Part shown: in pieces, positions 33,146 to 64,000 of the stretch | How positions within the stretch are numbered: the first letter of the stretch is position 1 | Layout of the letters: every line of letters begins with the position of its first letter | Assembly: GCF_032191835.1 (NCBI RefSeq) | Contig: NC_083237.1 | Span: forward strand, 21,886,001 to 21,950,000 | Direction of reading: 5' to 3' | Length of the DNA: 64,000 nucleotides | From: Heteronotia binoei | Taxonomy: Eukaryota | Made by a program: the position numbers and the translations under genes | The notes under the pieces: generated by a model | The model's input: the letters and a program-made list of their open reading frames with translations, nothing else | What the model was told of the DNA's origin: nothing | Database searches by the model: none

Positions 33146-33255
33146 GAAGGATCATTGTACACCATCATCCTGTACAGATTTATGTGCCTACGTGGCTGTG
33201 TTTCGTGCACATGTTGGCAGAATTTCTTGATAGTGATCACTCTTGAATCCCAGAA
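33146..33255 (+). CDS. Candidate upstream exon of gene B
   Basis: tctgtctctgcag|GAA ... CAG AA|gtgagt; only the phase 0-2 frame is open, compatible with the 37002 exon. Could be non-coding. Confidence 0.3.
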
Positions 33256-37001: not shown

Positions 37002-37093
37002 AGGGCAGATTCTTGGGCGTAGCTGTTTTGAAGTCAGGGTGTCTTCCATGCCCGGATTAGACCTCATGAGAGATGAAGGAAAGGCTTTGGAAG
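37002..37093 (+). CDS. Gene B probable exon preceding the CARD array (alternative ATG at 37048)
   Basis: tttttgttcttttaacag|A GGG ... GAA G|gtacaa; phase 2-1; ...MPGLDLMRDEGKALE; its phase-1 end joins CARD1. Confidence 0.5.
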
Positions 37094-38747: not shown

Positions 38748-38996
38748 AGAAAACTATTGTCTATGAAAACCAGTTGGAGCTGATACGCTGCGTCTCTAAT
38801 GTACCTGAAGTCTTGCATGAATTGGTTGGTGATGTTTTGAACAGGGCTCAATACAAAGACATTATGTGTGAGCCCACAGATGTGTTAAGGATGCAGAAGT
38901 TGTTTGAGGAGGTGTTGATAAGGAATGAGAGATATCAAGTCTGTTTCTACCTGGTGCTACAGAAGACAAACCGGGGTCTTACGAACAAACTGTTTG
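38748..38996 (+). CDS. Gene B CARD exon 1 (most divergent)
   Basis: ttttatag|AG AAA ... TTT G|gtaagc; 249 nt, phase 1-1; KTIVYENQLELIRCVSNVPEVLHELVGDVLNRAQY...RMQKLF. Confidence 0.78.
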
Positions 38997-41900
38997 GTAA
39001 GCCAATGTGTGAGTTTGAAATAGATTTAAAAAATGAATGCAAGAAAATAAAGGCTTCATGTTCAGCTAAATAATCTTCCTCCCCAAAATCAGCTTTTCTG
39101 GTTTTGGGCTATGCAGTCCATGAACTGTATTATCTCTTAATTTATTTATTATTTATGTATTTTTGCCCTTCCCGGAAAAGGACTCAGGGCAGATCACAAC
39201 AGATAATAGGCAACACTATATAAACACATTAATAGGCAGTTAAAGCAAATTTTAAAACATAATTTAAATTTATATTAGATCTTGCTCAAGACTAAATGGA
39301 CTTCCCTAGGGCCAGGAATAGTCAGCAGATCATGATTAGCAGAGAACAGAGCTCATATGGAGAGAGGTGGTCCCTCAGGTATGTTGGTCCCAGGCTGCAC
39401 AAGGCTTCAAAGGTCAGTACCAGTGCCTTGAAGCAGATCCAGTAATAGGTAGTCACTGCAGTTGGCGTAGGGCTGTGCCTGCACAGGCAGCAGGTGTGCT
39501 GCCACATCTTGCATGAACTGGAGTTTCCAAATCAACCACAAGGGCAAGACTGAGTAAAGCAAGTTACAGTAATCAAACCTGGAAGTGCCCTTTGCATGGG
39601 TTACTGTAGCCAAGTCCGGAGACAGGTAGGGAGCCAACTGCCTGATATGCTGAAGGTGATAAAAGGTGGACCTGGCAACTGTGGCGACTTTGGCCGCTGT
39701 AGAAACTGAGGCATCCAAGACCACCCCCAGGCTCCTCACTCTCTGGGCTGGCAGAAGTAATGTGCCATCCAAGGTAGGGAGCCTGATTCCTGACTCAGCC
39801 CCACCCCCCTCAGATACAGGACCTCTGTCTTCAATGGATTAAGTTTCAGCCAACTCTGCTGCAGCCTCCAGTGCCGTGGTCAGATTTTCTGGATCGGAGA
39901 AAGAGCTGGGTGTAATTAGCATACTGGTGGCAACCCAGTTCAAACTCTCAGACCAGCTGGGCAAGAGGGCACATATAGATGCTGAATTACATTAGACTAG
40001 AGAATCACCCCTGCGGCACTCCACATTAAAGTGGGTATCGTGGGGAGACTCCCTCACTAAGTGCCACCCTTTGTCCCCAATAGCGGAGAAAGGAGGAAAG
40101 TCATTGTAAGGCAGACCCCTGAACTCCTATCTCAGCAAGGCGGTGGGTCAAAAAATCATAGTCAACCATGTTGAACTTTGCTGTCAAATCTAAAAGTAGC
40201 AGCAGAGCTGCCCCACCCCGCCTCAGGACCACCCATCCTTGTTGCTCAGATCTTGACAGCAACCACGGTTTTTACTCTTGATATGACTCAGATCCTACTG
40301 CCCTTCAAGCAGGCTGTTCACATGCCATCCAAGTCTCTTTCTGTCCCTTCAGACTTCTTGGAATCCAAATCCACCCATCAGGGCTTGAGCACCTCGTACT
40401 AAGCTGGTCACTATTCTGGTTGTGAGGTTTCCATCACCTCCACCTGTCAGCAGCATCCATATAGCTGCTTGAGGTTGACAGTCAATCCCTTGATTCCCAA
40501 TTGCCATCCTACCGTGAGGGTCATTGGGATCAGGCATGAGAGAGATACTCATTGGAGTCAAGGTTTCCCTCTCCTCACCACCATTATTTGCACCACCATC
40601 AATCAAAGCATTTCTGATCTCAGTCTCCATCTTGACCCACTCATAGACCCCCATGGTGATTCCCACCAATGTATAGCTCTTCTAAGAGATAAAGGTAATT
40701 AGTGCTACCCAGAGGTCTTTCTGTTATACTTCTTTAAGGATTACTCCCCAAGTTTATCCGCAGAGAGACAATGGCTTTGATGCAGCAGTGGGCAAGTGGA
40801 ACTATAAACAGACTTAGCTCAGTTCTACTTGCCTTAGAGCTTGTGCAGCATCTAGGGCTTTCCTTCCTATGTGTTATAGTGTTCCAAAAATTGTTTGCAC
40901 AAGAGCCTGTGCAAGTGGAAATGCAAATGGGGGTACAATATATCTTACTTAGCACAAGTGGCTACCACTATCCTTTTTATGAGTTTTTACTTGCACAAGA
41001 ACTCTAGCACAAGTGGAAGTTCTGCGCTAGATCCAACCCATGGGACATGCTGGGTTGAGATTAAGCTGGACTCACAGTTTGCAGTTCTAGTTGAGTGGTA
41101 CAGATCCAAATCCTATGAGAACATTTATCTGTAACTTTTCTAATATTTTGCTTCCTAGGAGGACATTTTTTGGAACGGCACCAAAAAAAACTGATTGAAA
41201 AAGTCTCTAGGATGGGCATTGTATTACCTCGACTATTAGGTTTTGTCCTGAATGATGATGACTATCACTGCATTGGGACTGAGAAGACAGATGCGGGCAA
41301 GATGGCGAAGTTATTTGAGTTGATGCCAGGATGGGACAGAGCACAGAAGGATCAACTCTACCAGGAGCTGATTGAAACAAATGGGCTTCTTATCACATCC
41401 CTTGAGGGTAAAATGAATAGCATGAGAAAAACCTTACCATCACTGGGTGGATAGATTTCCATGTGACAGTGGTAATTTACTGTGGCACACATGTTATGAC
41501 TTGGGAAGCTGGCTGCATTGGTGGCTACAGATCACTCATTTCATCACATGTTTGTACCTGGTGTGCAGTAAAATCCTCCTAAGGAAGGAGAAAAAATTAT
41601 TTGGGGGTATTGCATTGAATCCAGTAATTTGCAGCCATTGATTGTTTCAGATCATTCCCACCTTCTCCTCCTCCCCAGCAGCCCCTTCTAAGCACCCCAT
41701 GAAGGCTGCACAACAGTAATGTGCATGAGTGTGTAACCCAAAGACCTTCCTGTTTGCAATAGCACACCCGGGTGTCTATTAGCCTACCCACTCAGTCCCT
41801 TCCTGCTCTGAGCTGCAAGATAAAAGGTGAACTAGGAATGAGGAGTGGGTGGGAACTGAGTCCAATCTGCCAAACTCACAAACAGACGTAGCTGTAGAGC

Positions 41901-44900
41901 AATCCACATGCTTATTCAACAGCACCAGGAACCTGGCAAGCTGGTCAGATTAATGGGAATGCCATCTCTCTCCTTCCAGCGAGCTTCCTGTGCCTTTGCA
42001 AGGAGTACTAAAAGACTACATGGCCATGAGAGGGGCATGGGTATTGGGGGGTCAAGCTATTTTTGAGCAGGTTGTGATGGCGCAGTAGCTAGGTGAGACT
42101 GAGATAGTTCGCAGCCCCCACAATAGAGCAGTAAGATGGCCTTGGTCACAGAAGCCATACATCCTGTTGTAGACTGAGCAGATGGGTGACAATTGACTTG
42201 GGAACGGGGTTCTTCCTGGGCCTTCACTTCATGAATGGCTGCCTGTTGAGGGTCCAGAGACACACAAAGGCAGGAATTGGGCTCCAAAGTTCTCTGCGTG
42301 GTGCTCAGGCAGGGTCTGCACCTCTCTTCTATCATGGGTGATGGATGGGGTAGCTATAGCTTGTTGGAGGATTATGTAACAGCTTAAAAACAAGGGGTAT
42401 TTTTTTCCAGCCAAAGCAGAAGAGTATGAAAGACAACCAGAAGTGTATGAGGCTTACAGTTCTCCATTCATGTCTAACGGTAAGGACAGAAGTCTGTACA
42501 ATAAGATCTTTGACCATCAGCGTGTTGTGCTAACAGACCATTGGATTCTCCCATTGTTCTAGTCTTCTGTTGATGGATGGGGATAGCAATGGCCTTGTTG
42601 GAAGATCATGTATGTTATTGTTTAAAAACAAGGGGATTTGTATACCCAGCCATGGAATGGATGGCACATTTACAAAACCAACACATGATAAATTGGATGG
42701 ATTTGAATAATGCATCTATGTTTGACAATAAGGACATAAGCACAACATACAAAATTTCCCCATTCACAAGAAGTAAGCTCCTACTCTATTGCAGCATTAG
42801 CTGATATTCTAAAAGACGTTAATGAGACAGTGTACTGGATTGGATCCAGGAATCTGCAGGAGCCGACAGTCACAGATCTTCACTTCCCCCACTTCCAGCT
42901 CTCCAGGATCTAAGGCTGAAGTCTTTCACATCACCTACAACCTGATTCCTTTATGCAGGGGTTGTTTTTTAGAAAAAAAGGTGGTGGAACTCATCCAGGG
43001 ATTATTATCCAGCTGCACATACTATTAAATGGACAAGGAAGTGGAACTCTCAGAGGAGGAGGAACTCTCAGAAAGGTTCAGGAGCTGAGCTCCTGTGAGC
43101 CCTCACTGAATCTGAGGCCTGCCTTTAGGTAGAGACACTGAGGAGTGAACCTGGCATCTTCTGCATACCAAAAGATGCTCCACTACTGAGCCATAACCCT
43201 TTCCAGAAGGGTATTTATTATTAATGTTACAAAGTGTGAGGCAGAGAAATGAGATCCACCTGGAAATTGATACTCTACTAATCCAGTGAAAAATGAATGG
43301 GAACCCCTCCCCTTGGAGTATGTGCAACATTGTTTTCCCACCTAAATCAACTGAGAGAGCACACCTTCATTCCCTCAGTTTATTCTTCACCAACATTTCA
43401 TGAAGATCGTTACTGTATAGCTCCATCCGTGAGTTTTTTCATGTGGAGATTTTCTTTTTCAGAACTCTCTGAAGAATTGCCTTTGAGACCATACTGCCAC
43501 TTCTGAAAAAACCCTTTCCAAAAAATGTCCCAAGTCTGGATGGGAACCTACAGAACCACCACCAAAGGTCCTTTGGGTTGAGCATCCTGTTTCCCAGAGT
43601 ACAGCCCCAGCAAACCCACAAGCAGGGCAGGACACCCTGGTTCAAATCTGCATTGTGAACTTATGGTTTCTGTTTTGGAACTGTTTATTTATTTAAGGCA
43701 TGATGCAGCCACATTTGAACACTTATAATGCCATCAATGGATGGGACTTGAAAATACTTTTCTATATTTATTCAACACACTTTTATCTTCCTGTAAGGAG
43801 CTCAAGACAGCGGACATAATTTTTCCTGTCCTCCATTTTGTCAGTGCAACAGCCCTGAGAGGTAGGCTAGGCTGAGAGAGGAAGACAGACTCAAGGCCAG
43901 GCAGCAAGTGTCATAGCCAGTGGGGCATTGAATCTGGGTTTCCACACACTCAGTCCAATGCTTTGACCACTATACTACACCCAAATCTCTTTGGCTGGAT
44001 TTTGGCCTTGCATAGACAAAACTGTATCATGGAGTTGAATGCCCTTATGGAGGATTAAAAAGGGAAGAGCTGTGTTGGTTTTACAATCTCCAATGTGCAT
44101 GAACTACTGGATGTATTTTATCATATTTTTTTTCCCTAGGGGAACATTTTGTTGAGAGGCACCAAGAAGAACTGATTCGCTGTGCTGTAGGCGTGGATGT
44201 TATAGTAGAATCTCTGGAGATCTGTGCTGTGATAACATTTAATCAAATGCAAGACATCGGAGGTACCAGTCAACAACGAATGCAGAAACTGTATAAATTG
44301 ATGCCAAAGTGGACAACTTCCCAAAAGGATCAGATGTGTGAAATCCTGAGATGCACAAACAGACGACTTCTTATGCAACTTGAAGGTAAATTAACTGAAG
44401 AGTGTCTATACATCCCTAGGCGATTGCATCCTCTATCCAGACTGGAAAAAAGCCTGTTGCCAGTTCCTTGTCTACCAATATGCAACCTGGGCTCCTCCAG
44501 GGGCCCCCACAGCACTAGCTAACATGCAGAGAGTGTGTGGGATCTTGTGATTTCCCCAGGCTGTACTTGTCGACAGTTAAACATACCTTCACTTTGCAAA
44601 ATCATTGAGAGAAAAGTAGGCATTTTTCCTTTAACTCTGAGGTCCTACCGCTGTCTGACCCATGATAAAAAGCAAAGACAAAAAATCAGGATGGATACTA
44701 CCATGTTATTTATTTTTAAGTATATCCCAGTTTTCCTTCCAAAGGGAACCAGAGTCTCACAACAACAAAGCAAAAATACAGCATAAAACGAACAAAGCCT
44801 TTATAGTTTCTGGAGTTAAAAGCTATACTTTGCAGTAGATTTCTGTAATTGTGCTATTTTTTTCTACGAAGCATGCTTCAAAGGTATGGTACAAAAGTAC

Positions 44901-47900
44901 TGTGTAACTAGCAGTTCTGGGTGGAAGTGGCGTAATAAGAAAATGAAAATGAAAAACTACAAACTGCATTTGCAGGGAATGATGTATGGAAGAAGAGGTA
45001 TGTGTTGATAGCATAATGATGGCTAAGGTAAGAGAGAATTATATAACCCTTGTTTTCTCTCCTACTGTTTGCTATCTCTGACTGCTTTTTACTATCTGCT
45101 TGTATCACAGTATTCTAAAATTAAGGCACTACATTTAGGGATAATTATTTATAATTCACCCAGCTCACTAAGATATGCAATATAAGAACAGCCCTGGTGG
45201 GTCAGACCAATTGTCCATCTAGGCCAGCATCCTGTCTCACACAGTGGTCAGCCAGTTCTTCTGGAGGGCCAACCATAGGGCATAGAGGCTGAGGCCTTCA
45301 CTGTTGTCGCCTCCTGACTCTGGGATTCTGAGGATTACTGCATCTGAATGTGGGAGTTTCCCTCAGTCATGATAAACAGTCGGTTTTTTCTCCATTGGAC
45401 CTGTGATATGTAAAATTGTGTAGAATATGCTTGTATTGTCTATATAAACCAAAATGGTAATAACAAATAAACTATGTCTTGGGCTGATTGGGACTCAATA
45501 GCTGGTTCACTGGCAAGCCACAGGCTAAGGGCTGAAGGGACAACATATATCCTTTTTCTCAGGGGGCTTTGTTTTGCATCCAAGGCTTCATGGCTGTGGA
45601 CGTGCCCAAATTTTATAGTACCTATGTGGAAAGGAAGGCACATTTAGTCCAGATGGATCTCAGCTACTGTTGACTTTCTGTCTTACATTCATATTCATTT
45701 TTTTTATTCTAAAAACTTTTATCCTGCTTTTCTGCTCTGATCAGAGCCACCAAGGTGGCTAACAGATTAAAAACACATAATAAAAACAGATCTTAAAAAC
45801 CATTTAAAAAACTACTTCAGACCAAGCAACAATACACATACATAAAAACAACAATTAAATCGTAGGGCAGGAATGGTGGATCACTAAGGAAACCAGAAAA
45901 AATGAAAAAGTCCACTGGCAGTAAAAGGGGACCGATGAGTCTCCCTGGAGAGAGGGCTCCAGAGATTGATGCTGCAACCGTGAATACCCTCTACTGGGTT
46001 GCCACCTGCCTAATCTCAGAAGGTGGAAGCGCCCAAAGTACCCAAAGATGAATATAGTGGTTGGGTGGGTTTGTAAGGAAGTTGGCGGTCTTTCAGGTAA
46101 GCTAGTCCCAATCCATATAGGGCTTTCAAGCACAGTACCATTACCTTGAGTTGATTGGAAACTCATGTAGATGGGCCAAGAGTAGAGTGATATGGTCCTT
46201 AAAACCAACTCCAGTCAATTTCCTGTCTGCAGCAATCTGTACCAACCGAAGTTTCCAAACACTTTTCAAGGGCATCTGCATGCAGAGTGCATGTATTATA
46301 TGTACTGTTACCCAACTCAGTCACAATCAGTTGGCTTATGCTGGTATCCATCCTGTACACTGAAAGCAAAGAATAAGAATACACTGAGGAATAGGTTTGT
46401 TTCAGAACTCTCCACCAGGACCACCTCTCCTTGCTTCAGGAACAGAGAAATTTTTCCACAGTGTGTGCTCCAGGCTGTCTTCATAGTTTACACAAGGATT
46501 GACAGCTTTTTAGAGACAGTTGCTTTGTGTCAGCTGGTGTCCCTGTCATGACCCTCATTTTAAAGCCTGCAAGTTGAGATGGGTCAGCACCATATTCCCT
46601 GAGCATGCTAAAACCTATGAATGATGTTTTCATATATCCCTTTTCCCAGGGGGCCATTTTGTGGACAGACATCTGGAGGAGCTCATCGAACAAGTGACAG
46701 TGGTTCCCCTAAACCTAAACCTGCTTCTTAGGTTGGCACTGGATGAGGTGCAAGATGTGACTGACTCGCAATGCACCACAGAGAAGATGCAAATGAAAGC
46801 CCTGTTCCAGATGGTGCAGGAGTTGAAGAGGCAGCAGAAAGATGAGCTGTACCAAGACTTGGTGGAAACAAATCCAAATGTTGTCAAAGTTCTAGAGGGT
46901 AAGTTTAGAGGCAGCCTTCACTGCTGTGTCTTTCTGAAGCTTAATTTCATTGGAACAACACTTGAGGTGAACAAAAAACTCTGCCTTGTACTGATTCTAA
47001 CCATCTGCTTTTAACAGGTAGCACTTTTCCTGGATCTTAGCAGGGGTAAGGAAAACTTTCTGTTGATGGACAGAATCCAGGCTGGGTTGGTCTTCTCAGT
47101 TTCTCTGCAGCCAGAACACACACAAATCAGCAGTGTGTTTCTTCCAGCAAGTGGAGGAAGGACGCAGGTGGAGGAAAGAGGCTCTAGTGCTGTCTGCTCC
47201 ACAGCTCGATGTTCTGAGATTCTCTCCTCCACTTTTAAATTCCCCATCTCTAGTTATTTCCCTTTTGAATCTTTTCTCCTTGTCTAATGTCATCATCTTG
47301 ACCAAAGCATGATTAACAGGTACCAATAGAAGAAATCTACAAGGCGGCAATGTGGATATCCATTTCTATTTTTCTTCATCGTTTCAAAATTAATAGTAAT
47401 GTATCTGCTAAGTTAATTTGAGAATGAATGAGCTTCAGCAAGTCCGATCACCCTGACCCTTTTTCATTGGATTGAGTTGCTCAACCCATCTAGAGTGTGG
47501 ACCCTGGGTTGGATCCAAGCTGCTGTTTTTCAGCATTCTCAGATCCACCACCAGAGAGCAGAACACTGGAATTTCTTATTAGTGGATGGAGGGAATTGAG
47601 CTCCACACAGAATTCTTTTGTTAGCAGCACTGCCCTGAACTGAAAAGTTAGCCTGATAGCAATTCTTCCTGAGCTAGCTGGCTTTTTTCAGCCTGTTTTT
47701 CTCATGCTAAAATATTTGCACAGTTTGCAGTGTACAGTTTTAGTTAGCATATGGTGATACTTCCATTACATGTCCCAGAACTGGGCTAAATATGAAACTA
47801 ATTTACATAACCCTATCGACAGACCTAGTGAGAACATTCACTCACTCCAGGACATACTCCATCCATTAAGTAAACTTCTGTGGTTAGTCCTACATTCTTT

Positions 47901-50900
47901 CCTGAAAATACAACAACTGAAGTTGTGATATGTTTCTTGCCAGAGGAACACTTTATCGAAAAACATGAGGAAGAAGTGATTTGGCGAACCTGTAGGGTCA
48001 ACACTGTCTTGCGGTGGCTCCATGATCCACATTTGCAGTGGATCACAGAGGATCAACATTCCTTGATAAAGGCAGATTCAGACCATCAGAAAATGCGTGA
48101 CTTGTACAAGCTGGTGCCAAAATGGAATAGGAAGCAGAAGGACCATCTTTACGCTGTGCTGAAGAAAACAAATGGACCCCTGATTGCTGACCTTGAAGGT
48201 AACATGATCTCTTCGTAATGTTGATTGAGGAGCTGACAAACTTTGGACAGGGCCTAGGCCTGGTGGTTCTTCCTTGTGCCTTGCGTGAAACTGTTGGAGC
48301 AACAACAGTGGTTGGCATAGTGAGTTGTGGGTGAGGTGGCAACTGGTGGGAGGTTTGGGGGCAGGGAAATGGGGACCATAATGACACATATGTCACTTCA
48401 AGTGGAAACATGTACATGACATAGGATAGCTGTAGGAATCAGGAATTCTTAGAGCTACCCTCTATCACTTCTGGGTTTTTACTGGAAATGACTAGTTTTT
48501 CAAATTTTTCTTTTATTGCCACTTGGAGTAGCAGTGGGCAACTGAATCTTGGGGTGGGGGATCCCCTGCTCCAATCAGGGGACTGGCAAGCTCCAATCAG
48601 AGGACTATTCTGTTCTGTAGTCAGGGCTTGCTAGGCTGTGCTTTTAGGTTTGTAAAAGGTAGTCCCCTGTGCAAGCACCAGTCATTTCCAACTCTGGGGT
48701 GACGTTGCTTTCACAACGTTTTCATGGCAGACTTTTACAAGTCTTTTTCAAGGCAGACTGCCTTCCCCAGTCATCTACATTTCCCCCCCAGCAAGCTGGG
48801 TACTCATTTTACCGACTTCAGAAGGATGGAAGGCTGAGTCGACCTGATCTGGTTACCTGAAACCAGCTTCCGCCTGGATCGAACTCAGGTCGTGAGCAGA
48901 GGGTTCAGACTGCAGTACTGCAGCATTACCACTCTGCGCCACGGTTTGTAGGATACCCCAAAATCACTCATGATAAATATAGGATGTTAACCAAGATGGT
49001 GGCTCCATAGCAAGGCAATGATAGACTTGCAGCATCCCTCACTCTGAAGAACCAAGATCCCTGGCAGTCTTTTTGAAACATCATTTCCTGGGGCATAAAT
49101 GCTGGTCACATGTCTACACCATTTCCTGTGAACCAGTGAGATCCAAAGACCATGAGGCATGCCTAGCTTAATTGCTAGCAAATACCAGCATCTTTACATG
49201 GGATTCTTTTCCACAGGTAGGCTTATTACTACCTTCAGCATTATCTTTAGCCGTGCTCTACTGGAACTGGGGCTAATTGGCTGAGATTTAGCTGTGTGGA
49301 CCTGAGACGTGTGATAGAATGAAAAAGGGCAAATAGAAGAAATTCACAGGGTTCTGTAAAGATTTGATATCTCCTCACCATGCATATCCCAGCCACCCAA
49401 TTCACTACATAGTTGGGATTCAGATGTGGGAGTAGTTGCCTGAATGATTATATTTGCCTTGAAACCGTCCAAGGGCCAGATGTCTGGTATTTCTCTTTTC
49501 TCAGAGGGGCACTTTGTTGAGAGGCACAAGGAGTACTTGATGAAAAGCATCACTGGAGTAAGAACAGTTGCATCCTCGTTAAGGAAACAGTTTACAATCA
49601 CCCATCGTCTGTATGCTGGCATCTTGAGGAAGGACACAACCAAGGAAATAATGGAGGCGATCTATGAAATGGTGCCAAGCTGGAATGGAGAACAGAAGAA
49701 TAATCTATACCGGGCATTCAGGAGGCAAAATGCATCCCTGATCAAGGAACTTGAGAGTAAGTGTGAGGACTCCCAACTCACAGCTATGACTGAGGCACTG
49801 ATTGGCATCTTCATTTGCACAGTCGCCATTTAGAGTATGAAGCGAAGATGCCTCACAATTCCTTCGCTACACAAAGCAAAAATCATAAGTAGCAGAAGTA
49901 CTTTCTCAGTCATGCCTATGTCTGTCTGTGTGTCTGTCTGTCTCTCTCTCTCTCATCCACACCCCAACATTCACCAATTGACATGGAAGATACTGTATAT
50001 AACAATATTGCCTTACTGTTTAAATATGAAAACGAATAATTTAAATCAGCTTGTCCCCACTGCTATGCCACATTTCATTCTGGACAATTAAGGACTCCTA
50101 ACAGCCTCAGCTGCCTGTTTCACAACTTTCTATGTTATGAGTTTGTCTGTATCAGCCTTGGAAGGTGTTCTGTCTGGAAAGTCAGTAAGCTTCAGAACTT
50201 TGATGTGTATTTCATTAGTCAAAAAGTAACAATACTTCAGTTGGTGGGTATATTAATATGTTCATATTGTAATTTCATTGTTGGGAACCTAGCATGCAAA
50301 TCATTATTTGTGTGAATGATTTATTTATTTATTTTATGATTTGTATCCCGCCCTTCCCACAAGTGGCTCAGGGCGGCTCACAACAAGTGATTGAACATAA
50401 TTTAAACTAACATTTAAAATATAAAAATTAAACATTCAAGAATTTAAAACCTAAAAACATTAGACAATACAGCAATGTGCATAACAAAGCTACATGGTAA
50501 GCTACCTATCATTTCCCGTATCAGTTAGATGTAGACTAGGTGTAAGCTAGCCGGAAGAGGGTTGTCTTACAGGCCCTGCGGAACTCAATAAGGTCCCGCA
50601 GGGCCCTCACCTCCTCCGGCAGCTGATTCCACCATGTAGGGGCCATAACAGAGAAGGCCCTGTCCCTAGTTGATTTTAGGCGGGCTTCTTTTGGCCCAGG
50701 GATAGCGAGAAGATTTTGAGTTCCCGACCTCAGCACTCTCTGGGGAACATGTGGGGAGAGACGGTCTTTCAGGTAGGCAGGTCCCAGGCCATATAGGGCT
50801 TTAAAGGTAATGACCAGCACCTTGTACCGAACTCGGTATATTATTGGAAGCCAGTGCAGAGCCCGAAGACCCGCCGAATGTGCCCCCACCTTGGGAGGCC

Positions 50901-53900
50901 CAATAACAGCCGGGCCGCGGCATTCTGCACCAGTTTAGTTTAATTAATTAATTAATGATTAAGGTAGATTCTTCTCCCTTTCTATTGCCAGCAGTGCCTT
51001 ATATAATGTCTTTGGGCCACAGCTGTGCCATCGTTTATAACAGGATGCACATTTCTGTTAAGACTAAAAACAAAGCAGGAAAAAGGGAGACACTGAACTA
51101 CAAGGTGCAGAAGCTTGGTATGCAATTAGAAATTTGTTTTGTCTGACATCTCAGGAATTGCAGTGCAGACTTCACCGTACTTATGGTGAAATTTTTATTA
51201 CATTTGCAATTTAATCTCTTTATGGGACAGGTTGGAAAACTATAGAAAATGGCTTAATTCCCAACTGGCTTGCAGAGAAATGCAGCTTATGTAAGAAAGA
51301 GCAGGTAAGTGCCTGGGTTCCCTGCTGAAGGGAACATACTAGAACAAGAGGTGGCTGTAGTGGGAGTTCTTGGTTTTCTTCCTGGCAAAAATTGGTGAGT
51401 GATGAATAGAGGAGTAAAACAGACATGAGGTAGACATTGGGAATCAAGGCTTGGGACCTGTCTTCAGTAGGTAGAATGGAATATGATCATTACACAGTTA
51501 ACTTGCTACTTTGAACTAATGGAACTTGGTAACTCTTTTTTCATATCTCCCCCACTCCCTTGCTTCTGTGGTTGGGGAGGGAAAGAGAACTCAAGGTAGC
51601 TGCAGATTTCTGTTGGAGGCCTTGCTGATTCCAGCAAAAATTCAACTGTCCCATTGTATGTATGTAAGCCAGAAATATGATCAATATCAAGCCTACAGAT
51701 TCCCAAATCTGGCTTTACAAGTTATAATAACAATCTCCTGTTGCCCAGGGTTTTTCAGAGATCCAACCAGAGCTTGTTCCAGATGCTGAAGGAAAGCTGA
51801 AGACATACAGGTGAGGGTTGAGAGTAACCATCTTGGATTAGCTGAGATTCTTTTGTCAGTTTCACCTCTTTGAGATCAAAGTATAGCCTTAGTAGACCTG
51901 ACTACTTTCCCCTCCCTTTTCCAACTGCAGAAGCCAATGGAATCTTTTCAGTAGAGAAACAGACTCAGGCCAGACTGGTTAAAGGATCTTTCAAGGACCT
52001 AAATAATGAACTGTATGTGTTAACTTGCAAATTAGTTCTGTTTCTGATGCATCTGGCTTATTAGTTGTTGGCAAACTGTCCTCTCCTCTGTTCTGTTCAG
52101 TATCAGCTTACAAATTTGCCTACCATGAGGTTTGCCAAGTAACACTTAGATATACTTCCACTTAGGCCTCAGATTCAGTGGGAGCTTACAGGAGCGCAGC
52201 TCCTGAAGCTTTCTGAGAGTTCCACCTCCTCCTGAGAGTTCCACCTCCTTGTCCATTGAATAGTATGTGCAGCTGCATAACAATCACTGGATGAGCTCCA
52301 CCACCTATTTTTCTACAAAATGACCCCTGCTTCCGCTGTATGAATATAGGAGAAACTTTATTGAACTGCTACAGGTACAAGACCCCATCCTTAGACAAGG
52401 CCTGCCAGAAGGGTACATGGATAGTATAGACACCCACTAAATAGTCCAGGAAAACGTGGGCTTTCCCCTCCCCTCCCAGGCCCCATTAATTGCTTACAGT
52501 ACAGCTTAACCCCCCCAGTAGCTCAGTAGGTCACAAGGAATGACATTGGAAAAGCAAAAACCATGGCAGAAGACATTGCATGGGTCCTGACACTTATAAA
52601 CTTTCACAGATTACATGGGAAAAGGATATCTTTTTCTGAGAGCTCATTCAAGCTTTGCTTAAAACTTTTGCCTCTTCTTTGTGGTCTCTGTGCAGTCCAC
52701 ACACTTAGGTAAAGGGCCTGAGTGTGCCCAGACTGAGAATTGTAGAGCTCTGTCAAAAGCTTTTTGGCATGCTTTCTCCCTGCCCTGGGGAGCAGGTTCA
52801 CTCTGCTCATGCCTGGAGCTGAGGGAAAAGGCACCATCCACTCAGTTCCTTTTTGGTTTTTAGTATTGCCTGAGATAGAGGCATTGCTCCCAAGACCAGT
52901 GCTGTTCCTCTCATAGCTATCAATGGTACATTCATCATGGAGCATATGGCTCTTCTATGAGCCCCTGGGGCTCCCTTGTCCATTCATCAACATAATTGAG
53001 ATCGACATCCTCTTTGCTATCATCAGCGCTCGTCCTTCTGCTCCCAGTGGGCACATTGGCTGCCTTCCTACTCTCCCTCCGTCTCTCCTCGTTGGCATCC
53101 ATGTCACTCCAGATCTTGAACCCAGTTGTCAGATCTGAGGCTTTGATCATTGCCATGCACTGACTGGTACTGACACCGCCGGCCTCTGAGGAATGATCGC
53201 TGTTCTCCCTCCTTAGACTCGGCAGTTCTTCTACATACTGATGGTTCCGTGCCTATGACTGTACATGGCAACATACCAAGACTGCCTCTTCGGCCCCACC
53301 ACCGAAATAACTCCGCAAACTTGCCGGATTTTGGATGCCCGTGCCATCCCACCATTGGGCCCTGACTACATTGCACTTACCTTTCCAGAACCAACCAACA
53401 CTGGAACTGAAGATTCCAGTTCCAAAGGGGACAAACTACTTTGCTCCCACCATCTGAAGTTTTTTTGGAGTTTATCTGACATATGGCGACTCTCCTCCAG
53501 ATATGGGTGGCTATGGATGCCCTGAAGGTCACTGGTGTGGTCCAGCCTTTCTTCCAGTGAGACCTACTGCCATCTGCCATACTTCCTATGCTACCAGTCC
53601 ATCTGGAAACCTATGAAGAAGTGTGGAATAAGCCAGCATTGGTAGCGTCAGTACTGAAATGTTATGAAGTAATCTACTGGATCCAGTCTTGAAACCCAAG
53701 GCTTATTTGTTTGGATATTTATCTCACCCTTCCCTGCAGGGCTCAGGGCAGCTCACAACAGATTAAAAATACAGATAAAACAATAAAAACATTCTGCAGT
53801 TCAATAACTTAATATACTGAGATGCCCAGGATTTTAAAAGGGCTGTTGACAAACACCCCCACAATTACTGAATAAGCTAGGTCAGCGATGGGGGTATGGA

Positions 53901-56900
53901 GCAGGGGAGTCCAGAATCCTTTACCTGTCAGCTCACTAATCACCTGGTGTGTGGCCTGCACAGAGACCATGAAGAAGATAAATAGGTTGTTTACCTGTCA
54001 CCTATGATCTTCGAGTCATCATCTGTGCAATCGTGTGTGCCCACCCAGCCTTTCCTACTGCTGGCATTTCCTTTTCACTTACCTTGAGTTTTTTTATTTA
54101 CCAGTGGTACACAGAAGGAACTGAGTGGGAGGCGAGTTTTCCCTCAGCTCTAGGTATGCATGGTTAATGCCTGCTTCCCAAAGCTGAGGGAAGGCCCACC
54201 AAAAATAAGAGAGCTCTAGAATTTTCCTGACGAAGGTCCAGTGCAGGCACAGAACCCAGTGTGCGACTGCAGAGATGACCACTTGAAGGTTACAGGCATA
54301 GGTTACAGGGAAGCAACCAGTTTTTCCCTGGGACCCTAGAAACTACTCTTTTAAGTCTGTTTCTGAATAATGTGGATTATAAATGGTGTAAATAAATTAA
54401 TAATTTTAGCATAACATTGTTTGAGCTTTACTTAGGGCCTGCAAGACCTTCCTCTTCCGACTGGCCTTCGCTGAAGAAAGAAGCTGCTAAGGATAACCGC
54501 CACCACAAAAGAACGAATAGCAATAGCACTTTTATTAATTTAATTTATTTGATTGATTTTAAACTTGTCAGAATTTTGATTGCTGGATGTAACTTTGTTT
54601 TTATATAATGCTGTTAGCCGCCCTGAGCCTGCTCCGGCGGGGAGGGCGGGATACAAATAAAAATTATCTGTCTATAAAAAAAATTATCTATAACTTAGGA
54701 TTTAGGGCAGGGGTCTCCCAGCAGATACCTCGTGAACTCCTGGTAGCTCGCCAGCTGCTGCAGAGTAGCTTGGCATCCTCTAGAAGACTTAGGAAAACAT
54801 CTGTCTAAGCTTTTATTCTTTGAAATGAATATATACACACGCACACACAATGTCATAAAAGTGAGTACACCCCCTCACATTTTGTAAATATTTAAGTTTA
54901 TCTTTTCATGTGACAACACTAAAGAAATGACACTTGGCTACAATGTAAAGTAGTGAGTCTACAGCTTGTATAACTGTGTAAATGTGCTGTCCACTCAAAG
55001 TTACGCAACACACAGGCATTAATGTCTAAACCGCTGGCAACAAAAGTGAGTACATCCCTAAGTGATAATGTCCAAATGGGGCCTGAAGTGTCAATATTTT
55101 GTGTGGGCACCATTATTTTCCAGCACTGCCTTAATGCTCTTGTGCATAGAGTTCACCAGAGCTTCACAGGTTCCCACTGGAGTCCTCTTCCACTACTCCA
55201 TGACGACGTCACGTAGCTGGTGGATGCTAGAGACCTTGCGCACCTCCACCTTCCGTTTCAGGATGCCCCACAGATGCTCAATAGGGTTTCGGTCTGGAAA
55301 CATGCTTGGCCAGTCCATCACCTTTACCCTCAGCCTCTTTCGCAAGGCAGTGGTCGTTTTGGAGGTGTGTTTGGGGTCGTTATTCATGTTGGAATACTGC
55401 CCTGCGGCCCAGTCTCTGAAGGGAAGGGATCATGCTCTGCTTTAGTATGTCACAGTACATGTTGGCATTCATGGTTCCCTCAATGAACTGTAGCTCCCCA
55501 GTGCCAGCAGTACTCATGCAGGCCCAGACCATGACATTGCTACAGAGGTTGAAGGGGTGGGGGGTCAGCCTGTCAGTGCTCAGACCATATGCCGCACGCT
55601 GCATCAAATTGATCTGCAGGGCTGTCGTCCCAGAAGGAAGTCTCTTCTAAAGATGATGCACAAGAAAGCCCGCAAACAGTTTGCTGCAGACAAGCAGACT
55701 AAGGACAGGGATTTCTGGAACCATGTCCTGTGGTCCGATGAGACCAAAATACACTTATTTGATTCAGATGGTGTCAAGCGTGTGTGGTGGCAACCAGGTG
55801 AGGAGTACAAAGACAAGTGTGTCTTGCCTACAGTCAAGCGTGGTGGGAATGTCATGGTCTGGGGCTGCAGTTCATTTAGACATTAATGGCTGTGTGTTGC
55901 ATAATTTTGAGCAGACAGCACATTTACACTGTTATACAAGCTGTAGACTCACTACTTTACATTGTAGCCAAGTGTCATTTCTTCAGTGTTGTCACATGAA
56001 AAGATATACTTAAATATTTACAAAATGTGAGGGGGTGTACTCACTTCTGTGATATGTTGAGTGTGTGTGTGCGCATATAAATTTCTCTATCTGCTGCTTA
56101 ATTGGTAGCTTCATTTCTGGTGTTTGTAGTCCATGTTTTGGTCTGCTTTGAAAGAAATTTTCTGAGTTATACGGTTCTAAGCAAACTCATGTGATTTCTG
56201 GAGTACCCTCTTCTTGAATTTGTGTAAGCAAAGATACGTTTGAACCCCTTGAGAAGCTGACTGGGCCATTTCTGCCTCTTTTGTTCCTTGTGACATGCAG
56301 AATTCACCTCCCCTGGGGAGGCTCTTTCCAGTGCTCCATTACCAAACTCAAATTTGATGTAACGGCAGCTGTGACTATCGAATATGCATATTGCTCCTGG
56401 GATCAGCACCTGAGCATAGCTGAAATGCAGACGTGGATGGTAGCTGGACCGCTGTTTGAGATCTGGGCAGATGTTGAAGAGAATGTGGCAGTTGTTTACC
56501 TTCCTCATTTTTTGTGTCTACAAGGTAAGGCAGCATTGAGAACAAAAACAGGTAGTAAGGATTGCATTTTCTCAAGCAGCCACATTTTTAGACAGATTGA
56601 CTCTGTGTGCGAGAAAAGGTTTGCCCCCTAAGTACTTGTGAAAAAGGGGATGTAGTCCCTCTAAAACATCATGTCAGATACAACCAATCATAGTTCCATT
56701 TGTTTCATCACTACTACCATCCCTGTCACACATACACCAAAAAAACTTCTGCAAGTCGTTAAAGAGATTTGCATTACTGAGGCAGATGGACAGAGATGGC
56801 CCATCCATTAGGTACACCTAGGTGGATTCCTAGGGCACCAGAGCAGGTGTGTGTGTGTGTGGGGGGGGAAGAGGCTCAAGACTACAAGGTAGCTGAAAGA

Positions 56901-57695
56901 GGAGGGAGGCATGGAAGCCAGCAGATATGGGCTCGCTTCGTCTTTATTCCTCCTGCCTCTGTACATGCAGTCTCTTGCCTGGCCGGTCATAGCCCTCTTC
57001 TCCTGAGGGAGGGAGGACGAGCAGGAGCTACCAGCTCTGCACCCACCCAGCTCCATTTGCAGTGCCTCTGCACCAGCCCAGCTCATGCCATTTGTGTGTG
57101 TGTGTGCCTGGGTTGGCTATGGTGCTAGAAACCTTTGGACTGATCCTGCAGGTGTGCTGTGACCTGGAAGGACAGATTTGAGTTAGGAACCCAGGATCTA
57201 GATTCTCTTCACCCAGCCCCCTTTCCCTTATAATGCTAGATTAGACTGCTGTCTTGGTTCATGGGAAAGAAGTCCAGACTTCTAATACATTCTAAACTTA
57301 TTTTCATAAGGTGCCAGAACAAACATTGATCTGCTCTGATTCCAATAACAAGATCATATGAAAAAACAAGGTTATAACTCTTGTTTCTTAACAATTTGTT
57401 CCTAGGTGGAGGAACAGTCGTCTCTCAGATTAAAATTGCCCATTTTGTTGGAGCAGGGTTGATCCTGGAGGAACCGGCATGGGTGTCCCAATTTTATGCT
57501 TTGCGGAAGAATCCCAAATTCTCTCTGCTGGGTGTGCTAATTAAACCACTCTACGACAGGCTCTTCAGTGTGCATGCTGTGGTGATACTTTATCAGATTT
57601 TCAAGAGCATCGCAGTACTTAATGTGGTGCCTTCCATGAAGATAGACCCAACATTTAACCTCTACTTGGTTCCCAATGATTCTTCGTTGATACAG
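38748..57695 (+). CDS. Gene B: six tandem N-terminal CARDs - CxxC linker - FIIND (spliced model; 3' end unresolved)
   Basis: Exons 38748-38996, 41159-41407, 44140-44385, 46650-46898, 47944-48198, 49505-49756, 51276-51304, 51749-51810, 56301-56524, 57406-57695 all have AG/GT ends and give one stop-free frame. Confidence 0.72.
40647..40694 (+). CDS. Candidate inter-CARD linker exon
   Basis: ctcatag|AC CCC ... AAA G|gtaatt; 48 nt, phase 1-1; PHGDSHQCIALLRDK. Confidence 0.4.
41159..41407 (+). CDS. Gene B CARD exon 2
   Basis: cttcctag|GA GGA CAT ... GAG G|gtaaaa; 249 nt; GHFLERHQKKLIEKV...KMAKLFELMPGWDRAQKDQLYQEL. Confidence 0.88.
42411..42479 (+). CDS. Candidate inter-CARD linker exon
   Basis: tttttttccag|CC AAA ... 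AAC G|gtaagg; 69 nt, phase 1-1; KAEEYERQPEVYEAYSSPFMSN. Confidence 0.55.
42650..42772 (+). CDS. Candidate inter-CARD linker exon (paralog of 42411-42479)
   Basis: tacccag|CC ATG ... AGA A|gtaagc; 123 nt, phase 1-1; upstream intron duplicates about 42340-42410 and both exons end in SPF. Confidence 0.45.
44140..44385 (+). CDS. Gene B CARD exon 3
   Basis: ttccctag|GG GAA CAT ... GAA G|gtaaat; 246 nt; EHFVERHQEELIRC...RMQKLYKLMPKWTTSQKDQM. Confidence 0.88.
46650..46898 (+). CDS. Gene B CARD exon 4
   Basis: ttttcccag|GG GGC CAT ... GAG G|gtaagt; 249 nt; GHFVDRHLEELIEQV...QKDELYQDLVETNPNVVKVLE. Confidence 0.86.
47111..47167 (+). CDS. Candidate inter-CARD linker exon
   Basis: tttctctgcag|CC AGA ... 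GCA G|gtggag; 57 nt, phase 1-1; weaker donor. Confidence 0.3.
47944..48198 (+). CDS. Gene B CARD exon 5
   Basis: ttcttgccag|AG GAA CAC ... GAA G|gtaaca; 255 nt; EHFIEKHEEEVIWR...KMRDLYKLVPKWNRKQKDHLYAVLKKTNGPLIADLE. Confidence 0.88.
48655..48944 (-). mobile_element. Sauria SINE
   Basis: aaaggtagtcccctgtgcaagcaccagtc...caagctgggtactcattttaccgac...gaaggatggaaggctgagtc is the characteristic Sauria SINE sequence in reverse orientation. Confidence 0.8.
49505..49756 (+). CDS. Gene B CARD exon 6
   Basis: cttttctcag|AG GGG CAC ... GAG A|gtaagt; 252 nt; GHFVERHKEYLMKS...EMVPSWNGEQKNNLYRAF...LIKELE. Confidence 0.86.
50320..50935 (-). mobile_element. L2 LINE 3' fragment (same family as 29330-31280)
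   Basis: ORF 50536-50889 LHWLPIIYRVRYKVLVITFKALYGLGPAYL is nearly identical to the C-terminus of the 29339 ORF. Confidence 0.9.
51276..51304 (+). CDS. Gene B CxxC micro-exon
   Basis: cttgcag|AG AAA TGC AGC TTA TGT AAG AAA GAG CAG|gtaagt; 29 nt, phase 1-0; KCSLCKKEQ. Confidence 0.65.
51749..51810 (+). CDS. Gene B pre-ZU5 exon
   Basis: ttgcccag|GGT TTT ... TAC AG|gtgagg; phase 0-2; GFSEIQPELVPDAEGKLKTYR, ending in YR like NLRP1 ..NLYR|VHF. A second acceptor (start 51759, phase 1) also keeps frame directly from CARD6. Confidence 0.78.
52930..54310. mobile_element. Degraded DIRS-like retrotransposon remnant
   Basis: Gag-like remnant LPVHLETYEEVWNKPA and terminal motifs (ttacctgtcacc..tcttcgag; gaaggttacagg) that resemble reptile DIRS ends; heavily decayed. 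Confidence 0.35.
54847..56060. mobile_element. Tc1/mariner transposon with long IR/DR terminal repeats, internally deleted and inverted
   Basis: TIRs of about 190 bp (aaaagtgagtacacccctcacattttg / caaaatgtgagggggtgtactcactt); transposase pieces NDPKH..WPS..PDRNPIEHLW on - and WSDETKI..TVK.GG.VMVWGC on +. Confidence 0.88.
56301..56524 (+). CDS. Gene B exon: FIIND ZU5 part 1
   Basis: catgcag|A ATT CAC ... CAA G|gtaagg; 224 nt, same length and phase as 3564-3787; 53 of 75 aa identical by hand count. Confidence 0.9.
57406..57695 (+). CDS. Gene B exon: ZU5/UPA junction with autoproteolysis site
   Basis: ttcctag|GT GGA ... ATA CAG|gtgaga; AHF and NPKF|SLLG retained; 36 nt longer than the gene A exon. 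Confidence 0.9.
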
Positions 57696-60325: not shown

Positions 60326-60644
60326 TGTTATGTAGTGTTGCTTTGAAATGGAAGGATGTCAAAGTCTTCTCTCTGCCTTCTCAGGCTTGGCTCAATAGGG
60401 GAGTTGGGAGCCTACTATGATCAAGGCCAAGCAAGGCCTGAGAACGAAAAAGTAACATCAATGTGTGAATGTTCCTGCATAACCCCCACCCTTTTAGGAA
60501 TCCCTTTGAAGTGTCCCTTATAGTTTCGTATCTACTGTATGTTCCTCAGTCTTTCAATGCTGGCATAGCCTGCAAGTACCAGAATCCAATAAACTAGCTT
60601 CTTTGTATCAACAACGACTCGTTATTGAATCTGCCGACTTGACA
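60326..60644 (+). mobile_element. Probable 5' LTR of the Gypsy element
   Basis: TGT...ACA ends, AATAAA at 60588-60593, directly upstream of gag; 3' LTR outside the window, so boundaries are unconfirmed. Confidence 0.55.
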
Positions 60645-63600: not shown

Positions 63601-64000
63601 CTTCGACAAACTGAAACGCCTATTTACTAGCGAGCCTATCCTGAGCCACCCCGACGAACAGTGGGCCTTCGTGGTGCAATGTGACGCCTCCTATGTGGTC
63701 GTCGGAGCCATTCTCATGCAGAAGGATGGGGAGGGGAAGCTGAAGCCTTGCGCCTACATCTCTCGGAAGTTCTCAGGGGAACAGAGGAATTGGTCAGTGT
63801 GGGACAAGGAAGCTTTTGCAGTCATGTTCGCCCTAAAAACCTGGCAGTCCTGGCTAGAAGGAGCTAAGGTGCCCTTCGAGATCTGGACCCGACCACAAAA
63901 ACCTCGAGGCCCTCACAGGGAAGCGAAAGTTGAGTGAAAAACAGGTCCGGTGGGCGGGGTTCTTTCTGGCAGATGCCCTCTCCCAGTTGCCGCAACACAA
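60326..64000 (+). mobile_element. Ty3/Gypsy LTR retrotransposon (gag, protease, RT, RNase H; runs off window end)
   Basis: Gag 61015-62120 (ATFDGDP, CFRCGDPNHLASSC knuckle; frameshift near 61600), protease ALVDSG, RT LDLRDAY..MPFGL..YLDD, RNase H VQCDAS..YISRK..KEAFA; frameshift near 63575. Confidence 0.95.

What the first reader, a model, noticed from the sequence alone, without database searches (positions are those of the whole stretch)
38748..57695. Hidden inflammasome-type gene: six tandem CARDs spliced in front of a FIIND
Six separate ASC/NLRP1-type CARD exons (246-255 nt, all phase 1-1, canonical AG/GT) lie in an 11-kb array. The frame continues without a stop through KCSLCKKEQ (51276-51304), GFSEIQPE..TYR (51749-51810) and the ZU5 and ZU5/UPA exons (seen in sequence). 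Established: FIIND proteins (NLRP1, CARD8) self-cleave at F|S and are activated when the N-terminal fragment is degraded; their N-termini are PYD-NACHT-LRR or a disordered tail, and tandem-CARD proteins such as NOD2, RIG-I and MDA5 carry two CARDs. I know of no 6xCARD-FIIND protein. Inference: the CARD array could be a bait or 'tripwire' for pathogen proteases, E3 ligases or CARD-binding effectors, or a multivalent adaptor or inhibitor.
Basis: partly seen in the sequence, partly recalled or inferred. Interest (0 to 1): 0.93.

Follow-up and report, generated by a model that had tools for sequence, protein, structure and literature searches.

The report
Gecko p53–six-CARD gene beside FIIND
The six CARD exons are real, but they belong to an already annotated, expressed gecko gene that starts with a p53-like domain; in the reads available its transcripts stop just before the neighbouring intact FIIND–CARD inflammasome module, which is fused to the CARD array in related geckos' gene models.

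Summary
The sequence observation holds. There are six CARD exons, all phase 1-1 with canonical splice sites, followed in frame by FIIND exons.

The gene is not hidden. Twelve window exons translate exactly to RefSeq XP_060110956.1 (LOC132583310, Heteronotia binoei, 757 aa).

RNA reads confirm C3→C4→C5→C6 splicing. They then run through the C6 donor at full depth to a stop at 49831–49833 and end near 50.03 kb. No C6→FIIND joint was seen.

The FIIND–UPA–CARD chain is nevertheless intact:
- It runs from 51231 to about 11.5 kb beyond the window and is in phase with the C6 donor.
- It is duplicated as a whole unit upstream.
- It is under purifying selection (Ka/Ks 0.44 for FIIND, 0.15 for the terminal CARD).
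- It is fused to the CARD array in leopard-gecko, Gekko, skink, python, turtle and frog gene models.

Most likely this is one locus with a dominant CARD-only isoform and an unobserved long CARD8-like sensor isoform.

Multi-CARD–FIIND proteins are widely annotated but undescribed in the papers searched. The p53-core N-terminus is the most unexpected feature.

The parts
28232..28372 (+). First coding exon (ATG) of LOC132583310; start of the p53-like core
   Evidence: The spliced translation of the 12 exons equals P0192/XP_060110956.1 exactly.
31383..31554 (+). p53-core exon 2
   Evidence: Pfam P53 at 6e-26 over residues 30-206. PDB p63 DNA-binding domain at 1e-34.
32428..32540 (+). p53-core exon 3
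33146..33255 (+). p53-core exon 4
37002..37093 (+). p53-core exon 5 (phase 2 in, phase 1 out); joins to CARD1
38748..38996 (+). CARD exon 1 (phase 1-1)
   Evidence: Pfam CARD 1.1e-7. Splice sites. Part of the RefSeq CDS.
41159..41407 (+). CARD exon 2 (phase 1-1)
   Evidence: Pfam CARD 2.1e-7.
42411..42479 (+).
   Evidence: Needed to reproduce XP_060110956.1 exactly.
44140..44385 (+). CARD exon 3
   Evidence: Pfam CARD 4.9e-4. Its 3' end is carried as the loose end of 19 reads that enter CARD4.
46650..46898 (+). CARD exon 4
   Evidence: Pfam CARD 1.7e-4. Joint 46897>47943 seen in 5 reads.
47944..48198 (+). CARD exon 5
   Evidence: Pfam CARD 2.5e-5. Joint 48196>49503 seen in 20 reads plus one X1 contig.
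49505..49756 (+). CARD exon 6, up to the conserved GTAAGT donor (phase 1)
   Evidence: Pfam CARD 1.1e-4. Donor. Orthologs splice at this point into the linker.
49757..50032 (+). Read-through tail and 3' end of the short isoform (stop at 49831-49833; coverage ends at about 50012-50032)
   Evidence: Depth stays at 34-49 past the donor, then drops. An X1 contig spans 49690-50032. The RefSeq C-terminus lies here. Sequence shown.
51231..51304 (+).
   Evidence: The in-frame upstream extension matches the homologs' linker. Splice chain. Essentially no read depth.
51749..51810 (+). First FIIND exon ('...QPE...KTYR')
   Evidence: tblastn to P0001, P0175 and P0223. Splice chain.
56301..56524 (+). ZU5 exon of the FIIND
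   Evidence: Pfam FIIND 2.2e-24. Aligns with NLRP1 and CARD8 ZU5, including LPHF.
57406..57695 (+). End of ZU5 and start of UPA, with the KF|S autoproteolysis site
   Evidence: Pfam FIIND 1.3e-6. Aligned to the SF|S of CARD8 and NLRP1.
60600..64000 (+). Retroelement (gag/pol-type ORFs) inserted in the UPA1-UPA2 intron; it pushes the remaining exons beyond the window
   Evidence: ORFs. The A/B colinearity is interrupted between 59252 and 66965. The remaining exons lie at L003:3126-3254, L003:6482-6620 and L004:1276-1553.
3564..6874 (+). Paralogous unit A FIIND exons (3564-3787, 5118-5371, 5878-6006, 6736-6874)
   Evidence: RefSeq models this only as the 221-aa fragment P0236.
18573..18853 (+). 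Terminal ASC-like CARD exon of unit A (a stop follows directly)
   Evidence: 70% identical to the CARD of this species' ASC.

Best explanation
The CARD array is the 3' two-thirds of LOC132583310 of Heteronotia binoei. The gene starts at 28232 with a divergent p53/p63-type DNA-binding core and continues through six CARDs.

**Shown.** The main mRNA does not use the CARD6 donor. It reads through to a stop at 49831-49833 and ends near 50.03 kb, giving a 757-aa p53core-6xCARD protein without a FIIND.

**Inferred.** The same transcription unit can also use the CARD6 GTAAGT donor and splice to 51231-51304, 51749-51810, ZU5, three UPA exons and a terminal ASC-like CARD. That would give a roughly 1,100-aa p53core-6xCARD-FIIND-CARD protein like the leopard-gecko ortholog.

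The long form would work like CARD8 or NLRP1:
- It cleaves itself at KF|S.
- The N-terminal piece (p53 core, CARDs, ZU5) holds the UPA-CARD piece in check.
- Pathogen-driven cleavage or proteasomal degradation of the N-terminal piece frees UPA-CARD, which then nucleates caspase-1/ASC CARD filaments.

The short form would then be a FIIND-less decoy or regulator that shares the same bait domains.
For: **Short isoform.**
- Exact CDS match to XP_060110956.1.
- P53 core: Pfam 6e-26, PDB p63 1e-34.
- Reads show the C3>C4 loose end (19 reads), C4>C5 (5 reads) and C5>C6 (20 reads plus a contig), and equal depth past the CARD6 donor up to about 50,030.
- Only two genomic copies of that stretch exist (100% and 90% identical), so reads laid at 95% or more come from this locus.

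**Long isoform.**
- Open exon chains with canonical, phase-compatible splice sites from CARD6 to the terminal CARD in both tandem units.
- The unit is conserved one to one.
- Ka/Ks between units A and B: 0.41 for CARD2-6 (p=2e-6), 0.44 for FIIND (p=2e-4), 0.15 for the terminal CARD (p=7e-6).
- No Met precedes the ZU5 fold in the linker exons.
- KF|S and LPHF align with CARD8 and NLRP1.
- UPA-FIIND and CARD Pfam hits on the distal exons.
- P0175 (Eublepharis) carries P53, CARDs, FIIND, UPA and CARD in one colinear model. P0174, P0006, P0001, P0173, P0223, P0009 and P0221 also join the CARD6-like exon to the same linker and FIIND.
Against: - No 49756>51231 joint was reported at a CARD6 depth of about 45, and the linker exons have about 0-0.7 depth. 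In that tissue the long form would be below roughly 7% of transcripts.
- RefSeq for this species has no fused model. It models unit A's FIIND as a separate truncated 221-aa protein.
- A roughly 6-kb sense-strand retroelement sits in unit B's UPA1-UPA2 intron.
- The fused models in other species are computational predictions whose RNA support I could not inspect.
- Only about 6% of two runs (two samples) was read.
Confidence: 0.55

Rival explanations
1. There are two separate genes. One is a complete p53core-6xCARD gene that always ends after CARD6. The other is an independent CARD8-like FIIND-CARD gene with its own promoter and a short first exon in the 50.0-51.2 kb interval. The two are never joined in this species, and the fused models in other species are annotation mergers.
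For: The reads end at about 50.03 kb with no joint to the linker. RefSeq separates a CARD-only model from a 'CARD8-like' FIIND model. FIIND-CARD proteins with short N-termini are common in reptiles and birds.
Against: No ATG-bearing first exon was identified. The linker exon's acceptor is phase 1, matching the CARD cassette. The linker 'S-RKS...LAEKC.LC' follows the CARD6 'ELE' directly in models from at least five squamate genera. The six-CARD-plus-FIIND unit was duplicated and retained as a block.
Confidence: 0.28
2. Unit B's FIIND-CARD half is a decaying relic, silenced by the intronic retroelement. Only the CARD-only protein is functional here.
For: Retroelement insertion in the UPA1-UPA2 intron. 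A 12-residue insertion in UPA1 relative to unit A. No protein model for FIIND-B in RefSeq. Almost no read depth at the linker exons.
Against: All eight exons are open with canonical splice sites. Ka/Ks is 0.44 for FIIND and 0.15 for the terminal CARD, well below 1. X1 and X2 hold about 15% of the words of 56301-57695 (inconclusive).
Confidence: 0.12
3. One reading: a previously unannotated gene whose product is constitutively 6xCARD-FIIND, with CARD1 near its N-terminus.
For: In-frame exon chain.
Against: The array is annotated and preceded by five p53-core exons. The dominant transcript lacks the FIIND. The architecture is common in databases.
Confidence: 0.05

Closest known systems
Eublepharis macularius LOC129338333 isoform X2 (P0175, 1162 aa; Gnomon model)
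   Same: Colinear exon by exon: p53 core, six CARDs, linker, FIIND, UPA, terminal CARD. It is the only other long protein found with this p53 core.
   Different: 57-80% identity per exon. That model continues from CARD6 into the FIIND, whereas the Heteronotia RefSeq model and the reads stop after CARD6.
Human CARD8
   Same: ZU5-UPA FIIND with an F|S site, a C-terminal CARD, no NACHT-LRR, and an N-terminus that acts as bait (alignments; mechanism from PMC7483925 and PMC10249858).
   Different: The CARD8 N-terminus is a short disordered region. Here it would be a folded p53 core plus six CARDs (about 730 aa). The P2 residue is K rather than S. Continuity with the FIIND is unproven in this species.
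NLRP1 (human, rodent)
   Same: FIIND-CARD module, closest solved ZU5 (rat NLRP1, 1e-14). Functional degradation and integrated-decoy logic (PMC13037943; 10.64898/2026.10.24.761588).
   Different: No PYD-NACHT-LRR here.
Multi-CARD/PYD-FIIND 'uncharacterized proteins' of skinks, pythons, turtles and frogs (P0009, P0221, P0002, P0003 and others)
   Same: Arrays of 3-11 CARDs N-terminal to FIIND-UPA, followed by a CARD or PYD.
   Different: Their N-terminal heads differ (PYD, zinc fingers, ubiquitin-like, GTPase). No p53 core was found outside geckos.
CARD-only proteins (CARD16/COP, CARD17/INCA, CARD18/ICEBERG)
   Same: The product seen here consists of interaction domains only, with no effector or enzyme, so it could cap or compete in CARD assemblies (from my own knowledge).
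   Different: Those are single caspase-1-derived CARDs. This one has six ASC/FIIND-type CARDs plus a p53 core.
p53/p63/p73
   Same: DNA-binding core fold by sequence (Pfam 6e-26; PDB 1e-34).
   Different: No transactivation or tetramerisation region in the model. In the p63 alignment, positions equivalent to p53 C176, R248, R249, C277 and R280 are A, W, Q, M and L. The L2 loop is 7 residues shorter.

Membership tests
FIIND-containing inflammasome sensors (CARD8/NLRP1 type) | ZU5-like plus UPA-like FIIND domain | tested here: met
   Pfam FIIND 2.2e-24 and 1.3e-6 on the window exons. UPA-FIIND 1.1e-6 on the distal exon. Unit A's P0236 scores FIIND 4e-25 and UPA-FIIND 3e-23.
FIIND-containing inflammasome sensors (CARD8/NLRP1 type) | Autoproteolysis motif (F|S) and the conserved ZU5 'LPHF' histidine segment | tested here: met
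   KF|S aligns to the SF|S of CARD8 and NLRP1. LPHF aligns with the NLRP1 ZU5. Actual cleavage was not tested.
FIIND-containing inflammasome sensors (CARD8/NLRP1 type) | C-terminal death-fold effector domain after the UPA | tested here: met
   Terminal exon L004:1278-1550 scores CARD 7e-17. It is joined in phase to UPA3. The unit A copy is 70% identical to this species' ASC CARD, and unit B's copy 68%.
FIIND-containing inflammasome sensors (CARD8/NLRP1 type) | N-terminal sensing region and FIIND-CARD on one polypeptide | tested here: inconclusive
   The genomic frame and the orthologs say yes. The reads and this species' RefSeq show only the FIIND-less isoform.
FIIND-containing inflammasome sensors (CARD8/NLRP1 type) | Forms a caspase-1-activating inflammasome, restrained by DPP8/9 | not testable with these tools
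   Needs cell assays.
CARD-only regulators (COP/INCA/ICEBERG type) | Product consists of CARD(s) only and derives from the caspase-1 CARD | tested here: not met
   The short isoform has six CARDs plus a p53 core. The CARDs are closest to ASC/FIIND-type CARDs. It may work in a similar way but is not a member.
p53/p63/p73 transcription factors | DNA-binding core domain | tested here: met
   Pfam P53 6e-26 over profile positions 2-192 of 193. PDB p63 1e-34, p73 2e-32, p53 2e-30.
p53/p63/p73 transcription factors | Conserved DNA-contact and zinc-ligand residues, and an oligomerisation domain | tested here: not met
   The alignment shows substitutions at the equivalents of C176, R248, R249, C277 and R280 (numbering from my own knowledge). 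CARD1 follows the core directly.

The most novel reading that the evidence does not exclude
In geckos, a p53 DNA-binding core has been captured as an integrated decoy at the N-terminus of a FIIND-CARD inflammasome sensor, with a six-CARD spacer or regulator between them. Viral or bacterial factors that bind p53 or send it to the proteasome would then destroy the decoy, release UPA-CARD and trigger pyroptosis. The abundant FIIND-less isoform would tune or buffer this tripwire.
Probability: 0.25. Interest if true: 0.85.

Novelty: new variant of a known kind. Interest (0 to 1): 0.55.

Why it matters
CARD8 and NLRP1 are the model examples of animal effector-triggered immunity by 'functional degradation', and recent work extends them to sensing viral and bacterial E3 ligases. 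A FIIND sensor whose N-terminus is a folded copy of p53, a protein many DNA viruses target, followed by six CARDs, would be a clear vertebrate parallel to plant NLR integrated decoys. It would give a directly testable bait–effector pair. The wider family of multi-CARD–FIIND proteins in squamates, turtles and frogs is annotated only as 'uncharacterized' and is absent from the papers I could search. For this locus the practical message is more sober: the gene is annotated, and its main product lacks the FIIND.

Tried and rejected
- **Array as a 3' extension of the upstream FIIND-CARD gene: rejected.** I considered that the CARD array extends the upstream FIIND-CARD gene. That terminal CARD is followed at once by TGA, and its only nearby GT would be phase 2, which is incompatible with the phase-1 cassette. 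RefSeq XP_060110952.1 (P0018) does join such a CARD to the next unit, but it does so by translating CpG-island 5'UTR exons before the true Met. I regard it as a read-through chimera.
- **Reads coming from a close paralog: rejected.** Only two copies of the stretch exist, at 100% and 90% identity.
- **Terminal CARDs as ASC's own exon: rejected.** This species' ASC is only about 70% identical to them, and its PYD does not map within the 184 kb examined.
- **Leopard-gecko locus:** The look-up of encoding contigs for P0175 found nothing, so I could not inspect that species' splice sites.
- **Second sequencing-run search:** X1 and X2 each hold 15% of the words of 56301-57695. This cannot distinguish spliced exons from background, because X1 also covers introns at low depth.
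- **Failed or unhelpful calls:** one literature search was too loose to be useful; a paper reading failed on a two-letter term; the intron-baseline script timed out. BLAST identities of 72-86% around the exons serve as the neutral reference instead.
- **P53 family scan of the genome:** it reported only three canonical p53-family loci. The divergent core exons here fell below its candidate filter.
- **Not attempted:** structure and complex prediction, because no binding claim is made.

Full report
**1. Observation**

The + strand between 38.7 and 49.8 kb holds six open segments. Each is bounded by a strong polypyrimidine-AG acceptor and a GTAAG-type donor, and all are 246-255 nt and phase 1-1. 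Each translates to a Pfam CARD, with E-values from 1e-7 to 5e-4. They are only 30-47% identical to one another. They are therefore old duplicates that have all kept frame and splice sites. The sequence-level observation is correct.

**2. Which gene the array belongs to**

A profile of the seven CARDs in the window, searched against 1.8 billion representative proteins, gave 63 hits at E<1e-30. Many carry 5-12 CARD stretches. One relative, P0192 (XP_060110956.1, 'uncharacterized protein LOC132583310', Heteronotia binoei), sits on a contig of 68,086,271 bp, exactly the length of this window's contig.

Twelve window exons, spliced at canonical sites, translate to that 757-aa protein exactly:
- 28232-28372, 31383-31554, 32428-32540, 33146-33255 and 37002-37093
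- CARD1 and CARD2
- a 69-nt linker exon at 42411-42479
- CARD3, CARD4 and CARD5
- 49505-49833

The gene is therefore annotated, not hidden. Its first five coding exons encode a p53/p63/p73-type DNA-binding core (Pfam P53 6e-26 over nearly the full profile; p63, p73 and p53 core structures at 1e-34 to 1e-30). In the printed p63 alignment, the positions equivalent to p53 C176, R248, R249, C277 and R280 are replaced and loop L2 is shortened. The residue numbering comes from my own knowledge. The core is thus unlikely to be a sequence-specific DNA binder.

**3. Transcripts**

I laid two raw RNA-seq runs and two contig sets of this species on 46000-51999. In run X4 the CARD exons are covered and spliced:
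- C4>C5: 5 reads, GT..AG.
- C5>C6: 20 reads plus an X1 contig.
- 19 reads entering CARD4 carry the 3' end of CARD3 as their loose end.

Depth does not fall at the CARD6 donor. It is 47/42 in 49600-49799, 34/49 in 49800-49999 and about 3 beyond 50000. An X1 contig runs continuously from 49690 to 50032. No joint from 49756 was reported, and the linker exons have 0-0.7 depth.

The read-through frame stops at 49831-49833, exactly the RefSeq C-terminus. The genome holds only two copies of this stretch, at 100% and 90% identity, so the reads belong to this locus. In the sampled tissue the dominant mRNA encodes p53core-6xCARD and ends by intronic polyadenylation. Run X5 shows no expression. Only about 6% of each run was read.

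**4. The FIIND half**

Homologs bridge CARD6 and the FIIND with 'ELE-S-RKS..GLIP..LAEKC.LC.KEK-DF.E.QPE...KTYR'. The real linker exon is therefore 51231-51304, and the CARD6 GTAAGT is the ancestral phase-1 donor.

Guided by the leopard-gecko protein P0175, I found complete open chains with canonical splice sites in both units. Unit B runs CARD6 > 51231-51304 > 51749-51810 > 56301-56524 > 57406-57695 > 67126-67254 > 70482-70620 > 75276-75553. The last three exons lie beyond the window (L003 and L004) because a retroelement of about 6 kb sits in the UPA1-UPA2 intron.

The distal exons score as UPA-FIIND (1e-6) and CARD (7e-17). KF|S aligns with the SF|S of CARD8 and NLRP1, and the ZU5 exon aligns end to end with NLRP1 and CARD8, including LPHF. 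The linker exons contain no methionine, so a complete ZU5 needs upstream coding sequence.

**5. Tandem unit and selection**

Adding 60 kb on each side shows a second unit upstream. It has the same six CARDs in the same order (68-88% amino-acid identity, one to one), then its own FIIND (3.5-6.9 kb of the window) and a terminal CARD (18573-18853). The 20 kb from the terminal CARD's flank through the CpG island, the p53-core exons and CARD1 is 94-96% identical between units. The rest is 72-86% identical, which indicates a more recent conversion of the 5' part.

| Part | Ka/Ks (A vs B) | Fisher p |
|---|---|---|
| CARD2-6 | 0.41 | 2e-6 |
| FIIND | 0.44 | 2e-4 |
| Terminal CARD | 0.15 | 7e-6 |

The FIIND-CARD half is therefore not neutral debris in either unit. 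The genome has four FIIND loci in all.

**6. Relatives**

Seven of the eight top CARD-profile hits scanned carry FIIND plus UPA-FIIND behind the CARD array, followed by a CARD or a PYD. The eighth (P0007, a frog protein) has CARDs only. The species are leopard gecko, Gekko kuhli, blue-tongued skink, pythons, several turtles and several frogs, nearly all named 'uncharacterized protein'.

Leopard-gecko P0175 has P53 (7e-40), CARDs, FIIND, UPA and CARD in one 1162-aa model that is colinear with every exon here. A search with its p53 core among long proteins found only itself and P0192. Partial Gekko and Heteronotia models also carry the core.

This species' RefSeq models unit A's FIIND only as a truncated 221-aa 'CARD8-like' protein (P0236). 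It models unit A's 5' half as 'p53-like' P0018, fused to the preceding terminal CARD through translated 5'UTR.

**7. Interpretation**

Shown: an annotated, expressed p53core-6xCARD gene whose main transcript stops before the FIIND.

Inferred (about 0.55): the same unit also yields a minor or conditional long isoform, p53core-6xCARD-FIIND-CARD, that works like CARD8 or NLRP1 by functional degradation. The short isoform would act as a FIIND-less decoy or regulator.

Rivals:
- Two independent genes (0.28).
- A decaying FIIND in unit B (0.12).

**8. Literature**

In the held library no paper contains both 'FIIND' and 'p53 DNA-binding domain', and none describes CARD arrays in a FIIND protein. A preprint notes a PYD-FIIND gene at the anole PYCARD locus (10.1101/2025.06.19.660630). 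A survey reports CARD8/NLRP1-like genes across reptiles and birds without describing these architectures (PMC11258412). NLRP1 as an integrated decoy and as a sensor of viral E3 ligases (PMC13037943; 10.64898/2026.10.24.761588) provides the mechanistic frame for the p53-decoy reading, which remains speculation.

**9. Limits**

I had one read-laying run of 6 kb, so the 51810>56301 junction and unit A were not examined. The fused models of other species are predictions whose RNA support I could not inspect. One of them (distal exons 'missing') is answered here.

Noticed in passing
window 28232-37093 (+): Five exons encode a divergent p53/p63-type DNA-binding core that forms the N-terminus of the CARD-array gene. 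Several DNA-contact residues and one zinc-ligand equivalent are substituted. Long proteins with this core were found only in geckos.
   Followed up: yes
window 18909-39128 vs C15:21827601-21847854: A roughly 20-kb block is 94-96% identical between the two tandem units, while the rest of the units is only 72-86% identical. The block covers the flank of the terminal CARD, the CpG island, the p53-core exons and CARD1. This suggests recent gene conversion or partial re-duplication of the 5' half.
   Followed up: partly
window 60600-64000 (+), continuing to about 66900 (L003): A retroelement with long gag/pol-type ORFs lies in sense orientation inside the UPA1-UPA2 intron of unit B and is absent from unit A. 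I only observed it. It could favour premature termination of long transcripts.
   Followed up: no
window 12444-12572 (+): A half CARD (63% identical to the first 43 residues of the unit A terminal CARD) lies between unit A's UPA exons and its terminal CARD. It is probably a dead partial duplicate.
   Followed up: no
L006/L007, window-equivalent 97102-97389 and 101041-101217 (- strand): An inverted partial unit: a terminal-type CARD (88% identical to unit A's) and a UPA3-like exon on the minus strand. The genome-wide FIIND scan detected no ZU5 exon there.
   Followed up: partly
C15:21827281-21855755 (P0018 = XP_060110952.1): The RefSeq 'cellular tumor antigen p53-like' model joins the preceding unit's terminal CARD, past its stop codon, to translated CpG-island 5'UTR exons, then to unit A's p53 core, CARD1 and CARD2. 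It looks like a read-through chimera, or a sign of transcription running from one unit into the next.
   Followed up: partly
window 46700-50000: All X4 reads differ from the assembly at many fixed positions (about 1-3.5% in CARD4-CARD6 and the tail), and the X1 contigs carry yet other variants. This points to high allelic diversity at this locus between individuals.
   Followed up: no
window 8320-11430 (-), 29339-31078 (+), 55000-55900: LINE-type reverse-transcriptase ORFs and Tc1/mariner-like remnants lie in the introns. Repeats at 48600-49000 and 50200-51000 attract very deep reads from elsewhere in all the runs.
   Followed up: no
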